DNA of 64,000 nucleotides from Ruditapes philippinarum (lineage: Eukaryota): assembly GCF_026571515.1 (NCBI RefSeq), contig NW_026861864.1, forward strand, positions 62,001 to 126,000, in the 5' to 3' direction. The notes under the pieces were generated by a model, which saw only the letters and a list, made by a program, of their open reading frames with translations, searched no databases and was not told the DNA's origin. A program made the translations under genes and the position numbers. Shown here piece after piece: positions 6,717 to 51,430 of this stretch (positions are counted from its first letter, which is position 1; each line of letters opens with the position of its first letter).

Positions 6717-9284
6717 ATGGCGCTGATGAAATTTGCTGCTTTTATTCTAACTTTAAGCATTGCTTACACACAGGAAGTACACTTTGGAAAATGCAAAAAT
6801 TTTACAACGCAACCAAACTTTGATGTTAAAAGGGTACGTTTTCTATAGAAATATGCTAAACTTACTTACATTTAGGATAAAAGTTTATGTAATTTTAAAA
6901 ACTGTCACCTCAGTCGGAAACGGGGTCAAATTTAGTCACAACCTGACTAAAGTTCAGATCTATACTTAAGTAACTTCTGGTCTATGTAGGAGCTGATTTT
7001 AATCAAATTGATTAAGTCAAAAGTGACGAATATTTGCCCAAAGTTATTCGTTAAGTAGTCAATCTTCTGTTTTTTTCCATTCTTTTATAGTATAAACCTA
7101 TATATGTATATAGTCAAGTATTTAGTGAATTTGATTATATGAGTGGTGTCATGATCCGGTCTAGATAAGAAAAATAAAAAAATGAAATAATTCGTAACAA
7201 TGCCAACATGTTTAGAAATGTGACCGATGACTTCATTTGGCCTAAACAAATATTTGTATACTTCATTTTGCATTGACTACAACCCAGCCATTAATGCATA
7301 CAGGATTTATGCTTGCAGTGAAATAATATATGTTTATGAAAGGCAGGAAACTAATACATAGACAAGTCATACGAAAAAGTTATCATACTTACTTATAAAT
7401 GAAAGAAATCATACTTTTATTCGTAAATGGAAGAAAATCAACCTTACTTATGAATAGAAAAATAATCATACTTACTTAATAATAGAAGAAGAAATCATAC
7501 TTGCTTATAAAAAGAAGAAATCATATTTACTTATAAATGGAAGAAATTATAATCACTTCTAAATGAACAAAATCATACTTATCAATGGAAGAAAACATCC
7601 TTTCTTATAAATGAGAGAATTCATCATAATTTCTTATAAATGAAATACATCATACTTATAAATGGAAGAAATTTATCTTTTTATAAATGAAATAAATCAT
7701 ACTTACAAAATGGAAGGAATCATATTTATAAATGGTAGAAATAAATGGAAAAAATCATACTTACTTATAAATGAATGAAATCATACTTATGAATGGAAGA
7801 AATCATACTTTCTTATAAATGGAATAAATCATACGTACAAAATGGAAGGAATCATATTTATAAATGGGAGAAAACATATTTACTTATAAATAGAAGAAAT
7901 TATACTTATAAATGGAAGAAATCATGCATACTTATAAATGGAAGAAGTTATAAATATTTTTACAGTATGCGGGAGGCTGGTATGACATAGAGAAGACTTA
8001 TTTTGCTGGTCAGATGAACAAATCTTGTGTCAAAGCTGAGTACTCTTTGAGAGATGACGGTAAAATAGACGTGCTAAACCAAGATTACACGTGCGTATAT
8101 ACCATGTACACTATAATTACAAAGTTATTCTTTATATTTTAGATGCTCAAAAATAAGATTTTTTTGGAATAAAAATTGACGGCGTTTTGAATTCATTCCC
8201 TATTCAAACATATTTAATATATATTAAGCATAATTATTAATTCCGATTTTTCTAATTTTCGTTTTCCTATTCAATTCAGTATGTTCATTTTTATCTCTTT
8301 GTTCAAATACATTATTTTTGTTTTATAAAAAATTCTTTTTATGATATAAAGACCTTTTCAATTAATTCTATTTTAATCACGTGGCTGTAAATTATTATTA
8401 GAGGATATTTGTTAATTTAATATTTTATGCTTTCTTTTCACTCAATAGGGCAGAATTACACGAAGAAAATACGACAGGAATTGCATTTTACAAAGATCCA
8501 AACGTTAAGTCCAAGTTAACTGTCAAACTGGGAAGTGAGTATAAATTATTTCTTTGAAAATTTAAAGGCCCATTATGGCAAGCAATTCAGATTTAAAGTT
8601 TCATTTCTCATTTTAGGGAGGGGAGGGGCATAAGAAAATGATATAATAATGGACGGTTTTATATGGGACGGCTTTTTAATATCATGTCATTCCCAAGTAT
8701 TTTTATTTATCATTATTTTGTTATGCTATATTCCGTCTAGGCCAGTTATTGCTTTCTGCGTAACCATAATAGCGGAGTTGTACAGTTATATACTCTGTTT
8801 GGTTTTACGGCGCACCAACACAGATTAGGTCATATGGCGCCGAAACAAGAAAGATAATTTTGGCTAACCTCGGGAGATGCATAGTCTCCAATAATTCGAA
8901 CTCATTCAGTCGCCTCTTACGATCACGCAGGGTTAAACGCTGGCTGCAATAGTGATTCCTGAGTCCGTACAGGCAACCCCTCAGCCACAGGGGGGCGTTA
9001 TGGACTCTTTTCATTATTTATTTTATTATCATTTTATTTTAATTTTAGCATCTCCAGAAGCAAATTACTGGATCGTTGAGACAGATTATGACACATATGC
9101 TTTAATTTGGTCCTGCGCTGAGCTCGAGGGCATCGCACACGCTGATATTGGTTGGATACTTGGCCGAAAACAAAGACTTGACGAAAATCTCATAACGAGG
9201 CTAAAACAGAAGTTGACAAGCCTCGGTTTGAATTATGAAAAGTTCTACAGAACTAAACAACCTCTGGATACATGTCCATGGTAG
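6717..9284 (+). CDS. APOD: Apolipoprotein D-like lipocalin 2 (4 exons, 187 aa, secreted)
   Basis: Exons 6717-6833, 7966-8090, 8449-8534 and 9049-9284, GT-AG, phases 0/2/1 as in paralog 1. MALMKFAAFILTLSIAYTQEVHFGKC...YAGGWYDIEK...KSKLTVKLG...YWIVETDYDTY...GWILGR...DTCPW. AATAAA at 9313-9318. Confidence 0.92.
7365..7950. repeat. Degenerate 22-27-bp tandem repeat (ATCATACTTATAAATGGAAGAA)
   Basis: Fills the 3' half of ApoD2 intron 1 up to about 15 nt from the acceptor. Confidence 0.85.
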
Positions 9285-11149: not shown

Positions 11150-11303
11150 NNNNNNNNNNNNNNNNNNNNNNNNNNNNNNNNNNNNNNNNNNNNNNNNNNN
11201 NNNNNNNNNNNNNNNNNNNNNNNNNNNNNNNNNNNNNNNNNNNNNNNNNNNNNNNNNNNNNNNNNNNNNNNNNNNNNNNNNNNNNNNNNNNNNNNNNNNN
11301 NNN
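11150..11303. other. Assembly gap (154 N)
   Basis: Run of N. Confidence 1.
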
Positions 11304-16260: not shown

Positions 16261-18345
16261 ATGTCACCTCTTTACGTCTTTGTAGCGTTCATCGCAGTCT
16301 GTCATGCTCAAGTGCCTCATCTTGGGAAATGCCCGGATGTTACAGTTGTTCAGAATCTCGATGTCGCAAAGGTCAGTTATCATATTTTATGAATAAATGA
16401 ATAAATAATTAAATAAATAAATAAATAAATAATAAAGTATAAAAATAGGAACGAGAGTACATATCATCTAATAATTGGTTCAATTTTTAAATTAATAACC
16501 AGTTTAAGAGTTATTTTAAGAATATTTACAATAAAGAGCTATATATAAAACTCACAATGTGTACTAGTATGTAATGGTTGCTCGTTGTCTCTAGCGAAGC
16601 ACGCCAAACAGCGCGTTGTCGTGCGGCGCGTTGTCGCGATTTCGCCCTGTCGCTTGGCTTATAAGCCAATCCTTCGATTTGAACCGAGCGACAATGTGAC
16701 ATCGCGACAACACGCCGCACGACAACGCGCCGTTTGGCGTACATCGTTAGCGACAGGACGACAAGACGAAAGTCCGACAACGCGCCGTTTGGCGCTTTGT
16801 CCTGTTGTCACTAGCGCCAACACGACGCACAAAAGCGTTCCAAATCAGCCAATATAGTATGTTGTTGTAAATTTAAACATTGCAAAGTTTAATCCAAACT
16901 TCATAGTTAAACTAGTAAATAAATTAGTATTTTATTCCAATCAAACATAAACTCTTGTAACTATAATTTAAAAACATTTTTGTTTTCAGTATCTAGGAGA
17001 TTGGTATGAGATTAAGAAGTTCTTTTTCTTCATCGAGGGCGCAGAAACCTGTATCCGTGCTAATTATAGTTTAAAAGATGACGGTCACATTCAAGTTTCT
17101 AATAGAGGTTACCGGTGAGTTAAATGATTTGTATAAATCACTTACTCTGTCATGTCTTTATGCTACTTTATCTGCAGTAGAATTTGACATTATTGGGGAG
17201 TTTTTTTCTTTGCTATTTTAGGTGTGACAGTTTATGATATTTAACTGTATTTGTATATTAAAATGTATTTCCTAATAAAGGTGGCTGCTACTCTGAACTA
17301 GTGGACTAATTTTGAGAAGTAAATCTGACCCAGTGTTGCCATGTGTTCCTCATGTATATGATTATTGAAGTATACCCAAAAATTATGTTAAAAATGGAAA
17401 AATATTTTAATATGCCAAAAGTCAGGGGGGCCCATTTTGGGGCGGGGCCGGGACGTACCCGGGGGACGCCCGCCATTGGTGTTTTTTTTACCCCCCAAAG
17501 TTTAGCAGTGCCCCTTTGAAAACAAAAGCCGTAAAATTTCCCAAGGGGTAATTTGGGGGGTTTAGGGGGAAATACAAAAACTTTTTAAAATCCTCATTAA
17601 AGTGTTTTTTTCTTTTAGTACAGCTGGGCTAAAAATAAAACATCAAACCAAAGACTGAAAAGCCCCAAGTTAAAAGGGGAAAAATTAAATGGAAACTGTT
17701 TTTATATACCGGTTGTTTTTCTAAACATCAAAAGGGTTGTCTGATTGAAGACTCAAATTGTGAAATCTTCCTAAACCCCCTTAAAACCCTTTAAATATCT
17801 AAAAATGGCCCCTTGTCCATCTTTCATATGCATGCATTCAACTATTTAGGGAAAAAATAAAATATTTAGAGACTATGCATTCAACTATTTAGGGAAAAAA
17901 TAAAATATTTAGAGACTATGCATTCAACTATTTAGGGAAAAAATAAAATATTTAGAGACTAAAGAGCAAATAACAGCGCAGACCATGATCAGACACCATG
18001 GACCTGGCTGTTGATCATGACCGGCACTGGTCGCATAGGCAGATCCATTCCCTAAAGGTCAAACTTCTAATAATAGTAACTGGTGAACTGACAAAACATA
18101 CAATATTTTCAGGGTCACCACGTGTTCCATATTGGATTGTGGATACCGACTATGATAACTACTCTCTCGTGTGGTCCTGTACTGACTTAGGAGGCTTTGT
18201 GCAGGCAGACTTCGCCTGGATCTTAAGCCGAACCAGAACACTCGACTCCCAGATTGTCGACAAACTCATTAAAACTCTCGGATCGTTTGGTGTCAACACG
18301 TCTAGTTTCCGGGATACGGTACAAGATAATTGTCCATCAGAATAA
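16261..18345 (+). CDS. APOD: Apolipoprotein D-like lipocalin 3 (exons 1, 2 and 4 intact; exon 3 not recoverable)
   Basis: Exons 16261-16371 (MSPLYVFVAFIAVCHAQVPHLGKCPDV...), 16990-17114 (YLGDWYEIKK...ETCIRANY...) and 18113-18345 (PYWIVDTDYDNYSLVWSC...AWILSR...DNCPSE*). Exon 2 ends in phase 2 and exon 4 starts in phase 1, so an exon of about 86-89 nt is required. I found no clean candidate. Confidence 0.8.
16572..16854. mobile_element. MITE with TA..TA ends and internal GTTGTCG/CGACAAC repeats (IS3EU-like)
   Basis: Flanked by direct repeat TAGTATG (16565-16571 and 16855-16861). GC-rich with inverted sub-repeats. Lies in ApoD3 intron 1. Confidence 0.6.
17832..17960. repeat. Three perfect 43-bp tandem copies
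   Basis: ATGCATTCAACTATTTAGGGAAAAAATAAAATATTTAGAGACT x3. Confidence 0.95.
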
Positions 18346-30600: not shown

Positions 30601-32779
30601 GTCAGAAAGCCAGCAAACTTCAGGTGCAACGTTATTGATCACATACAGAATAACAGTAAACAACAAGTGCGACTACATTGATCACAGACAGTAAGGTGCA
30701 ACTTCATTAACCACAGCCAGAATGCCAGAAAACTACTGTTTCGACTACATTGATCACAAACACGAAATTTGTACAACTATATTCATGATAATCAGAAAGC
30801 CAGTAAACTTCAGGTGCGACTACATAAATCACAGTCAGAAAGCCAATAAACTACAGGTGCAACGTCATTGATCACAGACAGAAAGTCAGTAAACTACAAG
30901 TGCGACTACATTGATCACAACCAGTAAGCCAAAAAAACTTCTGTTTCGACTACATTGATCACCGACACGAAATTTGTACGACTACACTTATCACAGACGG
31001 AAAGCCAGTTAACTACATGTGCGACTATATTGATCACAGACAAAAAGCCAGTTAACTACAGGTGCAACTTCATTGATCACAGACAGAAAGCCAGAAAACC
31101 ACTGTTTGGACTACATTGATCACAGACAGGAAATGTGTACGACTACATGTATATTTATCACAGTTAGAATGCCAGAAAAAATATTTGTGCGGCTATATTG
31201 ATTACAGATAGAAAGTAAGTTACTAGTAAGTATTGGTGCGAATTATCACATGCAGAAAGTCAGTTATCTTAAATGCGCGACTGAACTGATTTAAACAGTC
31301 AATTGGTTATATCATATGTATACCAATGAACAGGTTTATTGTATGTTTATGCTGTATAAACGCTTGAAACTTGAAAACTTGGTCAACTATTGTAAATAAT
31401 TATCACAAGTGGAAAACCGGTAGCGTAGAACATGACTATATTTATATGAAACAATGAATCCGTACACTAGCAAAACCAGGACATTAAATTAACTTCGCTA
31501 CTTATTTTTCCCCAATTTGTTTGAACGACGTTAACTTCAAGTCCATTAAAGCAAATTGACATGTTTCCTGTGCGAGCACCGCATGACAATGAGATAACAT
31601 ACCATTAATGTGCAGCTATGAAGTCCGGTTTTTTTTGTTGGTTTCGCGATAACCGTCATGTAGCCGACACTTGTTGGCTTGTTTTCCGTCCTAGCGATAC
31701 TTCAGAAGACACCAAGAAACTAACATTAATTTAGCAGCCACAACAGGACCATGTTGCACTAAGCAGTTTTATGAAATGAGCCGTGTCATGACAAACCCAA
31801 CATAATGGGTTTGCGACCAGCATGGATCCAGACCAGCCTGCGCATCCGCGCAGTCTGATCAGGATCCATGCTGTTCGCTATCAGTTTCTCTACTTGTAAT
31901 AGGGTTGGTAAGCGAAAGGCGTGGATCCTGATCAGACTGCGCGGATGCGCAGGCTGGTCTGGATCCATCCTGGTCGCAAAGTCATTATGTTGGTTTTGTC
32001 GTGACGCGGCTCAAATGTCTTCGTCGCTATTTCGAACAAAGTGCTCAACATAATACTAGTAATATAATAAATATTGTTTTAGATTTATTGGGGTTGATTA
32101 TTTAAGATACACTTTGGGGTCAGACAGTGACCCCCTCTTGTTCAGCATTAGCTTATTCTCAGTTACTTTTAGCATATAATCCCAAGTGGGCTCAAAATTG
32201 GTTTCATTCAATTTCCACGCGAATTAAAAAATCATGTTTATAATCAATTCCCTGGGATTTTTACTTCAATATTAAGATATATGTTAAAATGATAAATGTT
32301 CTTTTTTATTGGCGAGGCCCAAGCGTATGTGCCCCTTACTGCATCTAACCCTTTAACCGGTATGTATTTGAGACATAATCGATTGATCAATATGAGAATC
32401 AGTGTTGTCAATAACAACAACAACATAAAATACAATACATGCCTTTCTTCTAAATAATAAATTTTAAATCTACGTGTGTCACTGAAATAAAATAAATGTT
32501 TAATTAAGCTACTTGTAACTTGCTTATATGCATTTTAAGATATAAAATAGAACGTGTACAGGCTGTGTAAACTATACTAAAGTACCTGTATTGTTGTAAA
32601 CATTTCACCGGTGTTTTCTCCACAGACGGTCGGAATATTCCTGCCGCTCCGTCGCTCGTTGTATCTTTAGTGAACTTGTCGGCGATTAATGTCACTTTTC
32701 TATCAGGTAACACATCCTGAATTCTTACTGCCGTTGATAAACCGACCACTCCAGCACCAAGTACAACTATATCATACAT
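24613..32779 (-). CDS. DDO: D-aspartate oxidase (DAO/DDO family FAD oxidase), 10 exons, 336 aa, peroxisomal
   Basis: Exons 32779-32586, 28581-28467, 27640-27570, 27128-27063, 26822-26768, 26518-26417, 26107-26043, 25716-25599, 25289-25191 and 24738-24613. All are GT-AG and in phase (1011 nt). Motifs: GAGVVG (FAD binding), TTSDGAAG, VNCTG, PVRG, YIYPG, LGGTRQK, GLRP, HNYGHG and C-terminal PTS1 SKL. YIYPG and GGTRQK resemble DDO more than DAO. Confidence 0.92.
28636..31280. repeat. 42/43-bp satellite in DDO intron 1
   Basis: Homogeneous 42-mers at 28636-28960. 43-mers (GTGCGACTACATTGATCACAGACAGAAAGCCAGTAAACTACAG) at 29360-31200. Confidence 0.92.
31778..32012. mobile_element. Palindromic MITE (Sola-like), full copy in DDO intron 1
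   Basis: AAAT|GAGCCGTGTCATGAC...GTCGTGACGCGGCTC|AAAT with long near-perfect arms. Confidence 0.8.
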
Positions 32780-35851: not shown

Positions 35852-36430
35852 AACAAGAGCTGTCTGTAGGACAGCACGCTCGACTATTCTTAGTGCTTGA
35901 TTGTAAAAGAGTCTAAATAATGTAAAAAATTTCTAAGTTAACAAAAGGGTCAACTTTTTCCATGTTACAGTTATAGGAGAGAGTCCTATTATAAAAGAAG
36001 TGTATAAAATTTCAACTTGTTTCAAAGTCAGGTGTCAATGGAATTTGAAAATATCTGAGTAGTTATGTGGCATGCAAACTTGAAAGTGAATTTTAAGTCG
36101 AATAAGGAAAAAAATCCGTTTGCTTGATAGAGTTACCTTCTCCTGTCTTCAGGTTTGGGGCATGATGGTGAACAAGTGTTTCAAAGTTTCAATGGACTTT
36201 GAATGTCAATGGACTTTGAAAATATTTGAGGTGGTACACAAACTTTAACATAAATTCTAAGTCGAAAAAGGGGCAAAATTCTGTCAAAATGCTTGATAGA
36301 GTTACCTTCTCCTGTCTACAGGTTGGGGGTATGATCTTGAACAAGTGTGCAAAGTTTCAAAGCCATATGTCAATGGACTTAGAAAATATTTGATGTGTTA
36401 CAAAAACTTTAACATAAGTGGTTACACCGG
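35852..36430 (-). mobile_element. Helentron/HINE-like non-autonomous element with internal tandem units
   Basis: AACAAGAG terminus with hairpin GCTGTC-TGTAG-GACAGC. About 170-bp internal repeats (TGCTTGATAGAGTTACCTTCTCCTGTCT...TGAACAAGTGT). Confidence 0.55.
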
Positions 36431-36579
36431 AAAAAGACTTTCACTAACGTCATGTAAGTCACTGATTTACTTATCAAACAGAGCGTTTTCGTTAAAAATA
36501 GAAGACAAATACACAAAATGAGATATTAATGACATATTCCGTTCAACTTTAAAATTTATGACATCTCAGTATTACATCA

Positions 36580-39093
36580 TCAACAGTGAATGTCCGACTT
36601 GGATACCAAACATTTTAAGATTAGTTTTGATGGGTCAGTGATATATTCTATAACACCCTCACGCCCTTGAAGTGTGGAGACGAAGAAACTTGCCATCACA
36701 CCCTGAACAAATTGACGATATATGTCAAGTCTTGTGTTGTTTGTCGTCTTACAGAAGTGGGTCACGTGACAACCTTTAATAGATTATAATCAAGAAATAA
36801 TATATTTCAAAAGTTATTTTATCGCTAAGTTAAGTCACTGTTTGGAGTTCGAATGTCAGGAATTATTTTACAAGTACTATCTGTCCCTGTATCTTCAATA
36901 GGGAAAATGCACATAAGCGTCCTGGTGCCAATTTAAAATGTTCTATAAAATTGATAACTCCTACTTAGGACTTTGTAACTCCTACGTAGGAGATAAAAAG
37001 CCTAATTAAGAGTTTATAACTCCTACGTAGGAGTTTTTAACTCCTACGTAGGACTTTTTAACTCCTACGTAGGACTTTTAAACTCCTACGTTATAAGTCC
37101 TACGTAGGAGATAAAATAGCCTAATTAGGAGTTTGTAACTCCTACGTAGGACTTTATAATTCCTTCGTAGAAGAGCGCTTAAAAAATCCTGCGTAGGAGT
37201 TACAAAGTCCTAATTAGACTTTTTTTTATCTCCTACGAAGGAGTTACAAACTCCTACGTAGTACAAACTCCTAATTAGGCTTTTATATCTCCTACGCAGG
37301 AGTTTATCATTTTTTTAGAACATGTTAATTTGGCACCAGAACGCTTTCGTAAAAATGCGAGTGGTGTTAGAATAAATATTAATTAGTCAATTATTTAATC
37401 AATCAATAACAAAATACACTGTTAACTAAGATAACAACACTTTTTAAAAGTACTGAGTAATGTGTCCATACATTTTCAAGCAACAAAGCTTATCAAATGT
37501 TTAAACACACCACCTTGTTCTCCAAAGAAACGTGTTTCACAAAAGTCGGAAATTCAGTAACGACATCTCCCTTAAAATATCTTATTTTCGAAGCTTTAAA
37601 GAAAACTAAAACTATACATGTAAAGTAAAAGATTTACAGAAAAAATATAGCATGAACAATAATTGACATAATACATGTATTACATAACAAATAACTGACA
37701 ATTATCTGAAATTGGTGAAATTGAAAATCAGAATTCATTGACATTATAAGATATACCAAAGACAGTTACCTTCCCAGCCAAGCGGATCCAATATGTCACA
37801 ATGACCAAAATCCTGGGAAAAAATTATCAAGAAAATAAGATATGTTTTAACTGCAAATTTAAATTTATTTTATAAAAGATAGAATGAGTTTTCATGTTAC
37901 AAGTACTTTGCAAAGCATTATTAATTCATCCATTTACCTAAACATCTTCTTAGCCAAAGTTTAATATTATAGGCATTTTGCAAAGCCATCGCCTGAAATA
38001 TGTCTTTGAGTGTAGAGAGAGAAGAAAATATAGAAATATTATATTCAGACATGCTGCGTAATGTTTCATGCGTAATACATTAATTACTATTAATGGCAAC
38101 ACCACTGTACATAACTATTCAGTAGAGAAGATAATATTCTAGGAAAAATAATCTATATTTTAACACTAACATACCGCTGCTTCTATGGCAATTCTGGGAC
38201 ATTTCCACTGTTCATAAAACTGTTCGAAATCATATCCTTTAATATTACAAGGTGGGAAACCCTCCTCGGCCAGTTGTGTACCATACATTAGACCGGGTAT
38301 TGTATAGTTTACAGGTTGTCGGATTATCTGACTGTATGGCTCCAGGAATGCCGTGGACTGTGAAATAATACATTTCATTATTTACAATTTTATTTACATT
38401 GAATTTGTAAAACTGAGTAAGTCAGCAAGTTATCTTGGACAAAGGGAGCCGGCACAGTGTTTGGGAAGCATATAAAATACTTATTTGAACACCTGAACAC
38501 ACTAGAATAAAAGTTCTTACCATTACATATTGTATAGTCTATATGATATTTAATGATAAGATTTTTTTCTAGTGTTTTCAAGTGTTCAAATAAGTATTTT
38601 ATATGCTAGCCAAATACTGTGCCGGCTCCCTATGACATTGGAGGACTACGAAAAATATTAATAGAAACGATTTGCACTCGAATTTAATCACAAACTATAA
38701 TGTCAATTATTTTACATGATAATGAAGTACGTGAAAGTGATGACATCACAGAAATACTAGAAAATCATTGGATCATTTAGAATGTGTTTCCAGGACACAT
38801 CTTAATCCTTGCTCTTTCAATACAGACTTAATTAGTGCGGACGCCACGATACACTACCAAGAAGAAAAATTAAATTCATTTGAAAACTTAAATTATACGA
38901 AATCTGTAAAATGACAAAATATTTACTAACTATAAACGGATATTTCTCCGTTTCGATCATACGAATGGAAACATCACATCCGGCTGAATGGCACATCAGA
39001 CCAACGTAGTCCCATCGTGGTACAGACACAGTTTTATTGTCCATATATTTCATTAACTAAACATTGGTAAATAAACAAGAAAATATATAAATA

Positions 39094-39127
<34 letters not shown>

Positions 39128-40600
39128 TAATAATATATAAATAATAAGTTTACGACTTTACAATTTTCGAATCGATGGTGAAATAAGCCAAACGAGAATA
39201 CATCTGATAAGCAAAAGTTTGTTTGTTCATTTTGTTGTTTATTTTTTCCTTTTTTGATTGGTTTTTACGTCGTACCAACACAGAACCACCGAACAGAACC
39301 CTCAAGAATTCAAGATAAAGAAATTCATTCCAGTAACTGTTGTTACGGTAGCTTTAGCTATTTTTTAATGGAGTCTCTCCGGCTGTATAAATTATATACA
39401 TGTACTTTTATTGCAAAAATGTTTCATTTGTGAAATATTCTTTTACACTGATATAAAAATAATAATAATGATTAAAAGGTCTTACAAATTCAATTTCTTT
39501 GAAGTACTTGTCAATGTCTTGACCAACAGTCGGATTCAATCGTAATCCACGGTGCATCAGTGGGTAATCATAGTCCACGCCAAACACGAAGAAGCCATGT
39601 GACGCTAGTTTGGTGAGAAATATACTGTAGAACTCGGCGGGGACAAGTGTGTTTAGGCCACCGAGGAAATATATCACTGCGTAGTCGCCAACTTCCAGTG
39701 GGAAATATACTTAAAAACATAGTATATTGTCATTACAGCAAAGTCAACATCATACAAACACTTGGCTAAAAGAGTGTGTGAAAATATAACTTCGAACGTT
39801 TCCGATAATTAATTTCTTTCTTTTTTGTGAGGGGGAGTACGTGTAGTTGTCAAAAGTTTCAGCAGCAATTATCGGACTATAAAATAATGAAAAAACGTTA
39901 GACAATCTTTAAAAATCAACTGAAAACTGGACCAAAGAGGTGTGTCTTTCGGCCTACTGTTTATCAAACTTATTCTTGTAATATTTGTTTTGTTTTTCAT
40001 ATCAAATTCTACTGTTTTTTTTTTTGGTTTTTTTTTTAATTTTTTTGCATCACAACGTGAATCTTATTTTTATACAGATAAAAAGTCTTACCTTTCACAT
40101 GTTTAGGGCTGGCATCCACTGTAATAGATACTGTCAACTCCCCAACTTTCAGTGGACCATCATTGTACGGAATACCTTGGTCAACATAGAGCGCTAAACC
40201 TGTCGCAATATTGAGAAAGAGATTTTTCAGCTTCGTTAATGATATTTCATATATTGAATTACTATTATACAAAAATATGTCAGTTTAAAGAGAACTTTAA
40301 ACGTAAACATAAAGCTTTGAATATACATTTGAATGAAGGGTTCACTTCTAAAAATAACGGCCGTTCCTTTGTGAACCCTTCATTCAAATGTCCATATTGC
40401 ACATGGCAATCAATAAGATTTAACTTAAATTTTAAGATTTTAAATTTCAAATAGACTTGCAACGTTAATTAAGCTATATATAGGTAGCTGTTAAACATTT
40501 TCTAAATTTAACGATGATGATTTTCATTAACAAAAATAGACAGACTTAATGTAGACTTACCGCAAGTCACCAGACTTAGAAAAAATAATATGTCCTTCAT
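36580..40600 (-). CDS. Chlorophyllase-like secreted alpha/beta hydrolase, 7 exons, 305 aa
   Basis: Exons 40600-40561, 40199-40092, 39709-39486, 39056-38931, 38357-38175, 37812-37770 and 36773-36580, all GT-AG and in phase (918 nt). Motif order matches plant chlorophyllases as I recall them: P...GDYAVIYFLGG, FYSIFLTKLASHGF, CHSAG (GHSRG-like), FLEP (IDP-like), PGLMYGT, FPPC, DFGHCDILD, CK, RQFVQGVMASFF. N-terminal signal peptide; sequons NKT, NYT and NNT. Confidence 0.85.
36910..37351. mobile_element. MITE with internal CTCCTACGTAGGAG palindrome array and a 6-bp target duplication
   Basis: TIRs ..AAGCGTCCTGGTGCCAA / TTGGCACCAGAACGCTTTCGTA, with AAAATG on both sides. Lies in the last intron of the chlorophyllase-like gene. 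Confidence 0.75.
38440..38636. repeat. Fold-back inverted repeat (about 65-bp arms)
   Basis: AGGGAGCCGGCACAGTGTTTGG..GCATATAAAATACTTATTTGAACAC and its reverse complement. Confidence 0.85.
40325..40391. repeat. Perfect 21-bp stem hairpin
   Basis: ACATTTGAATGAAGGGTTCAC ... GTGAACCCTTCATTCAAATGT. Confidence 0.9.
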
Positions 40601-41978: not shown

Positions 41979-42506
41979 TACGGAAGCGTCCTTAATTTTC
42001 TACATAAAAACTCGTAATAAGGACTTCTTTACTTTTAATTAGGAGTAATAAACGCTTAATTAGTACTTTGTTACTTCTAAACAGAAGAAAAACCTTATTA
42101 GATCTTTATGACTCCCAGTTGCAACTTATTAGGCTTTTTAACTTTTAATTAGGAGAAATCAGCCTAATTACGACCTTGTAACTCTGATAATTAGTTAGTA
42201 CTTTCATGCACTAATTAGGAGCTAAGAAATAAAATCATACTTAAATCTCTCCAACTGCTCAATAGGCTTTTAATTAGGATTTTGTTTCTACTGACTACTC
42301 ATAAGTGTATAAATTCTCCTAATACGGCATTTTAAACTTCATTGACAGTTACAAATTAAATTTTTTTTAAAGAAAATAGCACATAATCAGAAGTTTGTAA
42401 ATTCCTTAATAGGAAAAAGAAACTCGTTATCATGGGTTTGTAAGTCCTAAGTAGGATTTCTAACTCCTAAATTTTGAAAGGCTATTAAAAGTTAAGAAGC
42501 CTCCAT
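41979..42506. mobile_element. Decayed relative of the 36910-37351 MITE
   Basis: Ends TACGGAAGCGTC / GAAGCCTCCATA with degenerate TAATTAGGAG/ACTCCTAA sub-repeats. Confidence 0.5.
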
Positions 42507-50224: not shown

Positions 50225-51430
50225 ATAAATCATTTGATACAATTTGGCAACAGGTGACAACGTAGGAGAAAGGTAAAAGAGAATTTATTTCATGCATGGT
50301 ACAAAGATGTGGCAACGTGCGGGATATATACTTATATGAGAAATTTTTTGTTACACTGGCGCGTAGGGATAAAGAAGGAGAAATTATTTGATACAATGTG
50401 GCAACGTGCAGGATATATACTAATATGAGAAATTATTGAAACACTGGCGACATGGGGATATAAAGGAGAAATTATTTGATACAATGTGGCAACATGGGGA
50501 TACAGAAAGGAGCAAGTATCTGATACAATGTGGCAACATGGGGATACAAAAGGAGCAAGTATCTGATACAATGTGGCAAAATGGGGATACAAAAAGGAGC
50601 AAGTATCTAATACAATGTGGGAACATTGGGATACAAAAAGGAGCAAGTATCTGATACAATGTGGCAACATGGGGATACAAAAAGGAGCAAGTATCTCATA
50701 CAATGTGGCAACATGGGGATACAAAAAGGAGCAAGTATCTGATACAATGTGGCAACATGGGGATACAAAAAGGAGCAAGTATCTCATACAATGTGGCAAC
50801 ATGGGGATACAAAAAGGAGCAAGTATCTGATACAATGTGGCAACATGGGGATACAAAAAGGAGCAAGTATCTGATACAATCTGGCAACATTGGGATAAGA
50901 AAAGGAGCAAGTATCTGATACAATGTGGCAACATTGGGATACAAAAAGGAACAAGTATCTGATACAATGTGGCAACATGGAGATACAAAAAGGAGCAAGT
51001 TTCTGATATAATATGGCAACAATGGGATACAAAAAGGAGCAAGTATCTCATGCAATATGACAACAACGGAATACAAAAAGGAGCAAGTATCTGATACAAT
51101 GTGGCAATATATGGATGCAAAAAAGGAGCAAGTATCTGATACAATGTGACAACATCGGGATACAAAAGGAACAAATATCTGATACAATGTGGCAAAATGG
51201 GGATACAAAAAATGAGCAAGTATCTGATACAATGTGGCAACATTGGGATACAAAAAGGAGCAAGTATCTCATACAATCTGGTAACATTAGGATACAAAAA
51301 GGAGCAAGTATCTGATACAATGTGGCAACATGGGGATACAAAAAGGAGCAAGTATCTCATACAATCTGGCAACATTAGAATACAAAAAGGAGCAAGTATC
51401 TGATACAATGTGGCAACATGGGGATACTAA
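50225..51430. repeat. 44-bp satellite (GATACAATGTGGCAACATGGGGATACAAAAAGGAGCAAGTATCT)
   Basis: About 25 units with degenerate edges. Confidence 0.95.

What the first reader, a model, noticed from the sequence alone, without database searches (positions are those of the whole stretch)
36580..40600. Intact, intron-rich, secreted chlorophyllase homolog in an animal genome
Seen: seven in-phase GT-AG exons give a 305-aa protein with a signal peptide and three N-glycosylation sequons. Its introns contain local repeats, including a MITE with a relative elsewhere in this window, which argues against algal contamination. Known: plant and algal chlorophyllases carry, in order, a G.YPV..F.HG segment, FYS.L..H..SHGF, GHSRG, IDP, PxLxxGxG, FPPC, DYGHxDxLD, CK and MRRFVGG. 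Each has a recognisable counterpart here in the same order. Inference: an alga-eating animal encodes its own enzyme for removing phytol from dietary chlorophyll or pheophytin, an activity usually attributed to ingested algae or microbes. Similar invertebrate genes may already carry automated annotations, but I know of no biochemical characterisation.
Basis: partly seen in the sequence, partly recalled or inferred. Interest (0 to 1): 0.85.

Follow-up and report, generated by a model that had tools for sequence, protein, structure and literature searches.

The report
Clam gene for secreted chlorophyllase-family esterase
The window holds a real, expressed, single-copy clam gene for a secreted enzyme of the plant chlorophyllase family; such animal genes are already in databases and papers, and nobody has yet shown that they remove phytol from dietary chlorophyll.

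Summary
On the minus strand, seven GT-AG exons (40600..36580) join in phase into a 918-nt ORF. It encodes 305 aa with an N-terminal signal-like segment and three N-x-S/T sequons.

The joined translation is 100% identical to RefSeq XP_060556545.1, "uncharacterized protein LOC132717156", of Ruditapes philippinarum. Intron-less public contigs of about 1-1.2 kb carry the same ORF, so spliced mRNA exists.

Family assignment is firm:
- Pfam Chlorophyllase PF07224 scores 79.4 bits (cut-off 26); PAF-AH scores 10.5 and PETase gives no hit.
- The family profile hits wheat chlorophyllase 8FJD at E 3.6e-30, against about 1e-12 for cutinases.
- The AlphaFold model (pLDDT 90.8) matches 8FJD best (Z 35.0 against 27.1).

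The catalytic Ser148 and His231 and the active-site cysteine pair are invariant. The acid is Glu172 rather than Asp, and the nucleophile elbow reads C-H-S-A-G-C.

The gene is single-copy. It carries genome-wide clam repeats in its introns, and its tree follows mollusc taxonomy, so it is neither contamination nor a recent transfer.

Orthologues are already labelled "chlorophyllase-like". A 2025 Nature paper and a Gammarus gut proteome already mention animal chlorophyllases. Activity on chlorophyll is plausible but untested. Read-level and tissue evidence could not be obtained.

The parts
40561..40600 (-). Exon 1: start codon and signal-peptide h-region (MKDILFFLSLVTC + first base of G14)
   Evidence: splice model; hydrophobicity, upstream in-frame stop; identity to P0104
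40092..40199 (-). Exon 2: end of the signal peptide and the N-terminal strand region (LALYVDQGIPYNDGPLKVGELTVSITVDASPKHVK)
   Evidence: the YVD.G.PY motif is conserved in the family alignment
39486..39709 (-). Exon 3: oxyanion-hole loop (FLGG-L68) and the FYS..L...ASHGF helix
   Evidence: Pfam Chlorophyllase, 21.3 bits on this exon alone; 70 homologues found with this exon; alignment to 8FJD F71 region
38931..39056 (-). Exon 4: sequon N131 and nucleophile elbow C146-H147-S148-A149-G150-C151 (Ser148 codon at 38985-38987)
   Evidence: H147 and S148 invariant in 49/49 family members; aligned to wheat H144-S145
38175..38357 (-). Exon 5: acid residue Glu172 (38340-38342) in FLEP, sequon N183, FPPC with Cys203
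   Evidence: Glu172 aligns with wheat Asp172 and Cys203 with wheat Cys220; conservation
37770..37812 (-). Exon 6: catalytic His231 (37801-37803) in DFGHCDILD
   Evidence: G230-H231 invariant; aligned to wheat His248
36580..36773 (-). Exon 7: Cys243, Cys249-Lys250, sequon N253, YRQFVQG helix, C-terminal Cys305 and the TGA stop
   Evidence: Pfam Chlorophyllase 14.2 bits on this exon alone; Cys249 aligns with wheat Cys264
36915..37346 (.). Intron-6 MITE-like element: 43-nt terminal inverted repeats (88%) and internal 21-bp palindromic units
   Evidence: at least 207 matches on other contigs of the same genome
38440..38634 (.). Intron-4 hairpin element: 73-nt arms, 90% complementary, 49-nt loop
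   Evidence: about 20 further places in the genome at 70-89% identity

Best explanation
This is the single-copy nuclear gene LOC132717156 of the Manila clam. The species is inferred from a 100% protein match. It encodes a secreted, probably N-glycosylated and disulfide-rich alpha/beta-hydrolase of the chlorophyllase family (Pfam PF07224). Shown here: the exon structure, the existence of spliced mRNA, family and fold membership, conservation of the Ser148/His231 pair and of the active-site cysteine pair Cys203/Cys249, and vertical descent within molluscs. Inferred: it works as a serine carboxylesterase using a Ser148-Glu172-His231 triad. Glu takes the place of the plant Asp, on the loop after strand beta6, and the backbone NH groups of Leu68 and Ala149 would form the oxyanion hole. 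After secretion, most likely into the digestive tract, it would hydrolyse a bulky hydrophobic ester from food. The leading candidate reaction is removal of phytol from chlorophyll or pheophytin, giving chlorophyllide or pheophorbide. Identity and catalytic competence are near certain. The chlorophyll substrate is the best single guess, at roughly 40-45%.
For: Gene model and transcript:
- One search gives seven GT-AG exons and 305 aa.
- Searches show the joined translation is identical to XP_060556545.1 (P0104).
- Four further variants differing by 1-3 residues sit on contigs of only 988-1169 nt, far shorter than the 4-kb gene, so they are intron-less cDNA.

Family:
- PF07224 scores 79.4 bits, E 2.7e-22, against a cut-off of 26. 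PAF-AH scores 10.5 bits, and PETase gives no hit (for P0076).
- Two exons hit the same profile separately and collinearly.
- The only PDB sequence hit is chlorophyllase 8FJD, at E 1.1e-10.
- The 30-sequence family profile scores 8FJD at E 3.6e-30 and 108 bits over positions 29-293 of 317. The best cutinase reaches 9.4e-13 over the N-terminal two thirds only.

Fold:
- The model has pLDDT 90.8 and pTM 0.90.
- Foldseek ranks 8FJD first (TM 0.81/0.83, E 1.4e-18), with PETases at about 0.65.
- VIA-align gives Z 35.0, rmsd 2.0 A and 273 residues for 8FJD, against Z 27.1 for the best cutinase.
- The protein-atlas neighbours after its own mollusc cluster are plant chlorophyllase clusters.

Active site:
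- H147, S148, G230, H231, C203 and C249 are invariant or nearly so in 49 relatives.
- They align with wheat H144, S145, G247, H248, C220 and C264. The roles of those wheat residues are given in PMC10011514.

Physiological context:
- Relatives occur in filter feeders and grazers: bivalves, gastropods, Lingula, amphioxus, Daphnia, a sponge and the alga-eating amoeba Dermamoeba.
- The family is reported lost in terrestrial animal lineages (PMC12804077).
- A host chlorophyllase is among the abundant gut proteins of Gammarus and falls on a chlorophyll-free diet.
- A pheophorbide-related compound was isolated from this very clam species (PMC7281735).
Against: - No enzymatic, tissue or read-level data were obtained.
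- Identity to the only characterised relative with a solved structure is 22-24%.
- Functional residues differ from wheat: Asp172->Glu, Arg146->Ala, Phe71->Leu, Leu249->Cys and the first elbow Gly->Cys.
- Phe200, the equivalent of the wheat substrate-contact residue Phe217, is not conserved in the animal clade (9 of 34).
- The family persists in carnivorous snails, in Solemya and in Capsaspora, which do not live on algae.
- In Biomphalaria the homologue appears in an infection-response list, not a feeding context.
- Plant and algal sequences could not be brought into a tree.
Confidence: 0.5

Rival explanations
1. It is a secreted digestive or lipid esterase of the chlorophyllase family whose natural substrate is not chlorophyll. 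Candidates are xanthophyll or sterol esters, wax esters, galactolipids or polyester-like material. The family name would then reflect only the plant members.
For: The next-closest structures are cutinases and PET hydrolases at Z about 27. One Haliotis orthologue is auto-named 'cutinase 1-like' and some relatives also pass the PETase profile. Substrate-contact residues of wheat chlorophyllase are poorly conserved. The family is kept by non-herbivores.
Against: Chlorophyllase stands well above cutinases in sequence (108 against 51 bits) and in structure (Z 35 against 27). The Gammarus protein responds to a chlorophyll-free diet. The family is reported lost on land.
Confidence: 0.33
2. It has a non-digestive role. 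Examples are humoral defence or detoxification, such as clearing phototoxic tetrapyrroles or microbial esters in haemolymph or mucus.
For: A Biomphalaria 'Chlorophyllase-1' is differentially expressed after schistosome exposure. Capsaspora, a symbiont of snail haemolymph, has a homologue. The protein is of secreted type.
Against: There is no direct evidence in this species. The taxonomic pattern and the Gammarus gut data point to feeding.
Confidence: 0.1
3. It is a catalytically dead or binding-only homologue (pseudo-enzyme), because the canonical G-H-S-R-G and Asp are altered.
For: The elbow reads C-H-S-A-G and the acid is Glu.
Against: Ser148 and His231 are invariant in 49/49 relatives, and Glu or Asp occupies the acid position in 32 of 34 clade members. 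From general knowledge of alpha/beta hydrolases, Cys is small enough for the elbow position and Ser-Glu-His triads are active in cholinesterases and some lipases.
Confidence: 0.04
4. It is algal or microbial contamination of the assembly, or a recent horizontal transfer from an alga.
For: The family name alone; nothing found here supports it.
Against: The gene has six spliceosomal introns with 29% GC. Intronic repeats are spread over hundreds of places in the same 1.4-Gb genome. The neighbours are lipocalin and DAO-type exons. The protein tree follows mollusc taxonomy: Ruditapes with Mactra, then Dreissena plus Mya (support 100), then other bivalves and gastropods. Homologues reach amphioxus, Lingula, a sponge and Capsaspora.
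Confidence: 0.02

Closest known systems
Plant chlorophyllase (Triticum aestivum CLH, PDB 8FJD; Pfam PF07224)
   Same: It is the best sequence, profile and fold match. It has the same order of nucleophile, acid and His, with the acid on the loop after beta6. H-S in the elbow and G-H-x-D-x-L-D are conserved, as is the FPPC...CK cysteine pair that forms the active-site disulfide in wheat (Cys220-Cys264; PMC10011514).
   Different: Identity is only 22-24%. The acid is Glu172 instead of Asp172. The elbow is C-H-S-A-G-C instead of G-H-S-R-G-G. The oxyanion loop reads G-G-L instead of H-G-F. Clade-specific cysteines are added (C146, C151, C232, C243, C305). The protein has a signal peptide and conserved N-glycosylation sequons. 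The wheat metal-site and dimer-disulfide residues do not align (H76, D255, C270). It is animal-encoded and its activity is untested.
Bacterial cutinases / PET hydrolases (LCC, TfCut, IsPETase; Pfam PF12740)
   Same: They share the alpha/beta-hydrolase core at Z 26-27 and rmsd 2.6 A, and an active-site disulfide near the catalytic His (PMC10011514 discussion).
   Different: The profile match covers only the N-terminal two thirds, at 51 against 108 bits. PF12740 gives no hit for this protein.
Annotated metazoan 'chlorophyllase-like' proteins (e.g. Crassostrea virginica A0A8B8ECU..., Pecten maximus, Lingula anatina, Branchiostoma floridae)
   Same: They form one orthologous clade at 34-78% identity. 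They share length, signal peptide, C-H-S-x-G-C, L-E-P, G-H-C-D and a C-terminal Cys.
   Different: None in kind. The clam entry is merely labelled 'uncharacterized protein'.
Second animal/holozoan clade (Daphnia 'Chlorophyllase', Capsaspora CAOG_06009)
   Same: It also passes PF07224, with the same Ser, His and cysteine pair.
   Different: It is a separate deep branch (support 100). It has a P-V-D-G-x-D-P loop, lacks the extra cysteines, and carries G/S/A at the first elbow position. No copy of it is found in this clam genome.
PAF acetylhydrolase (Pfam PF03403)
   Same: There is a weak local match around the ASHGF helix (10.5 bits). PAF-AH exons elsewhere in this genome also touch the chlorophyllase profile.
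   Different: The score is below the cut-off of 20. The two other genomic hits are separate PAF-AH genes, not paralogues of this gene.

Membership tests
Chlorophyllase family (Pfam PF07224) | Whole-protein score above Pfam's gathering threshold (26 bits), and best among related hydrolase profiles | tested here: met
   79.4 bits, E 2.7e-22 for P0104, which is identical to the spliced model. Exon-wise scores are 21.3 and 14.2 bits at collinear profile positions. PAF-AH scores 10.5 bits and PETase gives no hit.
Chlorophyllase family (Pfam PF07224) | Fold closest to a solved chlorophyllase | tested here: met
   8FJD ranks first: TM 0.81/0.83; Z 35.0, rmsd 2.0 A over 273 residues, against Z 27.1 for cutinases.
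Chlorophyllase family (Pfam PF07224) | Nucleophilic Ser preceded by His in a G-H-S-x-G elbow | tested here: inconclusive
   H147-S148-A149-G150 are present and H-S is invariant. The first Gly is Cys146 (C in 29 of 34 clade members). It is a small residue, so probably compatible, but the canonical motif is not met to the letter.
Chlorophyllase family (Pfam PF07224) | Catalytic Asp (wheat Asp172) after strand beta6 | tested here: not met
   The aligned residue is Glu172. In the clade it is Glu in 28 of 34 and Asp in 4 of 34. An acidic residue is kept, so a Ser-Glu-His triad is inferred, not shown.
Chlorophyllase family (Pfam PF07224) | Catalytic His in D-[YF]-G-H-x-D-x-L-D | tested here: met
   DFGHCDILD; G230 and H231 are invariant in 49/49 and align to wheat His248.
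Chlorophyllase family (Pfam PF07224) | Active-site cysteine pair (wheat Cys220-Cys264) | tested here: met
   Cys203 (FPPC) and Cys249 (CK) align with Cys220 and Cys264 and are conserved in 48-49 of 49 relatives.
Chlorophyllase (EC 3.1.1.14) as an enzyme activity | Hydrolysis of the phytyl ester of chlorophyll or pheophytin | not testable with these tools
   It needs a recombinant-enzyme assay. No paper in the searched library reports such an assay for any animal homologue.
PET hydrolase-like / cutinase (Pfam PF12740) | Score above the gathering threshold (28 bits) | tested here: not met
   No hit up to E 10 for P0104. The Mactra orthologue scores 13.7 bits.
PAF acetylhydrolase (Pfam PF03403) | Score above the gathering threshold (20 bits) | tested here: not met
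   10.5 bits, E 0.22, on residues 57-95 only.

The most novel reading that the evidence does not exclude
Aquatic grazers and filter feeders carry their own secreted gut chlorophyllase. It would be an ancient holozoan clade with a Ser-Glu-His triad and a cysteine-flanked nucleophile. This enzyme, rather than algal or microbial enzymes, would produce much of the chlorophyllide and pheophorbide seen in their guts and faeces. In this clam it lies beside lipocalin and FAD-oxidase genes that might handle the products.
Probability: 0.35. Interest if true: 0.6.

Novelty: already known. Interest (0 to 1): 0.35.

Why it matters
Dephytylated chlorophyll derivatives such as pheophorbides are widely used as tracers of grazing (my own knowledge). 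They also accumulate in shellfish digestive glands. The enzyme that makes them is usually assumed to come from the algae or from microbes. An animal-encoded, secreted member of the chlorophyllase family is an obvious candidate and makes the question testable with one recombinant protein. The candidate is not a discovery of this scan, however. The protein is in RefSeq. Its orthologues already carry chlorophyllase names. The family's presence in aquatic animals and its loss on land are published, and a host chlorophyllase has been seen in an amphipod gut proteome. What remains open is the biochemistry, including whether the Glu-for-Asp, Cys-flanked active site of the animal clade still accepts chlorophyll.

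Tried and rejected
- Exon-wise Pfam alone was not discriminating. PAF-AH exons elsewhere in the genome (L001, L002) score 26.4 bits on the Chlorophyllase profile, more than the window's own exon. They are separate PAF-AH genes, not paralogues.
- Paralogues were sought in the genome with exon 3, exon 5, a Haliotis paralogue and a Daphnia protein. Only this locus was found.
There is therefore no read-level junction evidence and no tissue evidence.
- Two profile searches of the large protein collection returned only animal, protist and unnamed sequences. No plant, algal or bacterial chlorophyllase was returned, so the planned cross-kingdom phylogeny could not be built. The tree has no outgroup and is rooted at the midpoint.
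- A second copy of the intronic MITE in the window was sought. Nothing was found at E 1e-6, and only a degenerate stretch at E 4.6e-4.
- No AATAAA or ATTAAA lies within 500 nt downstream of the stop, so the polyadenylation site is unassigned.
- The literature search with six terms at min_terms 2 was badly framed and gave nothing useful.
- Contamination or recent transfer was rejected (see rival explanations).
Triad geometry and disulfide pairing in the model were therefore not measured.
Full report
**What is there**

The gene lies on the minus strand. A script that anchored each boundary on the sequence gave seven exons: 40600-40561, 40199-40092, 39709-39486, 39056-38931, 38357-38175, 37812-37770 and 36773-36580.
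- Every intron begins GT and ends AG.
- The phases fit, giving a 918-nt ORF of 305 codons.
- An in-frame stop lies 48 nt upstream of the ATG.
- Residues 4-17 are strongly hydrophobic (mean Kyte-Doolittle 2.55). No later 19-residue window exceeds 1.31. This fits a cleaved signal peptide and a soluble mature protein.
- The three sequons are N131, N183 and N253. Those at 131 and 253 are conserved in the family consensus.
- CDS GC is 43% and intron GC is 29%.

**How the spliced model was handled**

I searched the public tools exon by exon, by reference. The joined sequence was never typed or sent to a search tool. It was built only inside scripts from /data/window.fa and compared locally with proteins that the tools had returned.

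That comparison showed that a database protein equals the model exactly. P0104 is RefSeq XP_060556545.1, [quoted passage not shown], 305 aa with 0 differences. All full-length analyses then used P0104, or P0076 which differs at 2 residues, by id.

The species name rests on this identity. The genome has 1.41 Gb in 15,874 contigs.

**Expression**

P0076, P0105, P0106 and P0107 each carry the whole 305-aa ORF with 1-3 substitutions. They sit on assembled public contigs of 988-1169 nt. The gene spans 4 kb, and the genome holds no second, intron-less copy. These contigs must therefore be spliced cDNA.

**Family**

*Profile evidence*
- On single exons, Pfam Chlorophyllase PF07224 is the best hit for exon 3 (21.3 bits, profile 36-72) and exon 7 (14.2 bits, profile 244-287).
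- That alone is weak. PAF-AH exons elsewhere in the genome reach 26.4 bits on the same profile.
- The whole protein settles it. PF07224 scores 79.4 bits, E 2.7e-22, against a cut-off of 26. PAF-AH scores 10.5 bits, and PETase gives no hit.

*Solved structures, by sequence*
- The only sequence hit is wheat chlorophyllase 8FJD, at E 1.1e-10.
- A profile of 30 relatives scores 8FJD at 108 bits, E 3.6e-30, over nearly its whole length.
- Cutinases and PET hydrolases come next at about 51 bits, over the N-terminal two thirds only.

*Predicted structure*
- The AlphaFold2 model built on that alignment has mean pLDDT 90.8 and pTM 0.90.
- Foldseek ranks 8FJD first (TM 0.81/0.83), with PETases near 0.65.
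- VIA-align gives Z 35.0, rmsd 2.0 A and 273 residues for 8FJD, against Z 27.1 for the best cutinase.
- In the protein atlas, its own mollusc cluster is followed by plant chlorophyllase clusters.

**Active site**

The wheat paper (PMC10011514) defines these features:
- the triad Ser145-Asp172-His248;
- the oxyanion residues Phe71 and Arg146;
- the active-site disulfide Cys220-Cys264.

The HMMER alignments use the same numbering. They put clam His147-Ser148 on His144-Ser145, Glu172 on Asp172 and His231 on His248. Cys203 (FPPC) falls on Cys220, and Cys249 (CK) on Cys264. Leu68 falls on Phe71, and Ala149 on Arg146.

Conservation across 49 full-length relatives:
- H147, S148, G230, H231 and C249 are invariant, and C203 nearly so.
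- Within the mollusc/brachiopod/amphioxus/sponge clade (34 sequences), the acid position is Glu in 28 and Asp in 4.
- In that clade the first elbow residue is Cys in 29 of 34.
- Cys151 (29/34), Cys232 (34/34), Cys243 (34/34) and the C-terminal Cys305 (29/34) are clade-specific additions.

The protein looks like a competent serine hydrolase with a Ser-Glu-His triad and several disulfides. That is what one expects of a secreted enzyme. Triad geometry and disulfide pairing were not measured, because model coordinates are not exposed to scripts.

**Is it the animal's own gene?**

- Two intronic elements are dispersed repeats of this genome. The 432-bp MITE-like element at 36915-37346 gave 207 reported matches from 911 candidates. 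The 195-bp hairpin element at 38440-38634 has about 20 other places.
- In the window itself only a degenerate relative is visible, near 41985-42500.
- Neighbouring exons encode lipocalin domains (8952-9284 and 17998-18345, plus strand). Another encodes the N-terminus of a DAO-type FAD oxidoreductase (32504-32779, minus strand).
- A maximum-likelihood tree of 52 relatives places the clam protein with an unnamed 78%-identical sequence, then Mactra. Dreissena plus Mya follow (support 100), then scallops, oysters, mussels, unionids and gastropods. The gene tree thus follows mollusc taxonomy.
- More distant members come from Lingula, three Branchiostoma species, a sponge, Daphnia, Capsaspora and the amoeba Dermamoeba.

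Contamination and recent transfer are excluded. An ancient transfer cannot be judged, because no plant, algal or bacterial sequences could be retrieved for the tree.

**What it probably does**

Evidence for dietary chlorophyll or pheophytin as the substrate:
- Family membership.
- A taxonomic range dominated by aquatic filter feeders and grazers.
- The published statement that the chlorophyllase family is among those lost in terrestrial animal lineages, read there as a dietary shift (PMC12804077).
- An amphipod gut metaproteome in which a host chlorophyllase is abundant and drops on chlorophyll-free granules (bioRxiv 10.1101/2024.11.06.622251).
- A report, cited in PMC7281735, that a pheophorbide-related compound was isolated from Ruditapes philippinarum itself.

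Evidence against:
- Identity to the characterised enzyme is only 22-24%.
- Several pocket residues are changed.
- The gene is retained in carnivorous snails, in Solemya and in Capsaspora.
- A Biomphalaria homologue turns up in an infection-response list.

I put chlorophyll or pheophytin dephytylation at roughly 40-45%. Another dietary ester gets about one third, a non-digestive role about 10%, and a dead enzyme a few per cent.

**Novelty**

- The exact protein is in RefSeq.
- Orthologues are named "chlorophyllase-2, chloroplastic-like" (Crassostrea virginica, Pecten maximus, Mizuhopecten), "chlorophyllase-1" (Lingula, Branchiostoma) or "Chlorophyllase" (Mytilus, Dreissena, Sinanodonta, Daphnia).
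- The animal family is mentioned in at least three papers.
- I found no biochemical characterisation of any animal member in the searched library. Much of the subscription literature is not covered by that library.

The finding is therefore real and correctly read at the family level. As an observation it is already known, with one open and easily testable functional question.

Noticed in passing
window 8952-9284 (+) and 17998-18345 (+): Two lipocalin-domain exons (Pfam PF00061, E 4e-9 and 1.3e-9), apparently tandem ApoD-like genes 18-28 kb from the chlorophyllase-like gene. Lipocalins bind hydrophobic ligands, so a link to pigment handling is imaginable but untested. Another first-reader note (s1-804191) already flags this cluster.
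   Followed up: partly
window 32504-32779 (-): An exon encoding the N-terminal FAD-binding part of a DAO-family oxidoreductase (PF01266, E 9.6e-9). It belongs to the next gene downstream on the same strand. The rest of that gene was not modelled.
   Followed up: partly
window 36915-37346; many contigs of G000: The intronic MITE-like element belongs to a large family, with 911 first-look candidates in the genome. Copies often sit in clusters on the same contig (e.g. C10489, C12307, C15483). They carry 21-bp palindromic CTCCTACGTAGGA units.
   Followed up: partly
L001 (G000:C14653:1558-4671) and L002 (G000:C12235:103407-106520): Exons of PAF-acetylhydrolase-type genes (…MSHGIGGNRTTYS…ASHGFIVV…). 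They score above the Chlorophyllase Pfam cut-off on their own, a reminder that single-exon hits to this profile are not specific.
   Followed up: partly
window 50332-51408 (-): The longest ORF of the window (358 aa) has no significant Pfam match. It may be a single-exon gene or a transposon remnant.
   Followed up: no
window 36080-36579 (-): No AATAAA or ATTAAA within 500 nt downstream of the stop codon, although transcript contigs imply UTRs totalling only about 70-250 nt.
   Followed up: no
proteins P0111 (Pinctada imbricata, 556 aa) and P0116 (Mytilus edulis, 472 aa): Database models in which a chlorophyllase-like domain is doubled, or is fused to an ion-transport domain. These are probably merged gene predictions of tandem or neighbouring genes.
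   Followed up: no
window 11150-11303: A run of 154 N (assembly gap or masked stretch). It was left untouched.
   Followed up: no
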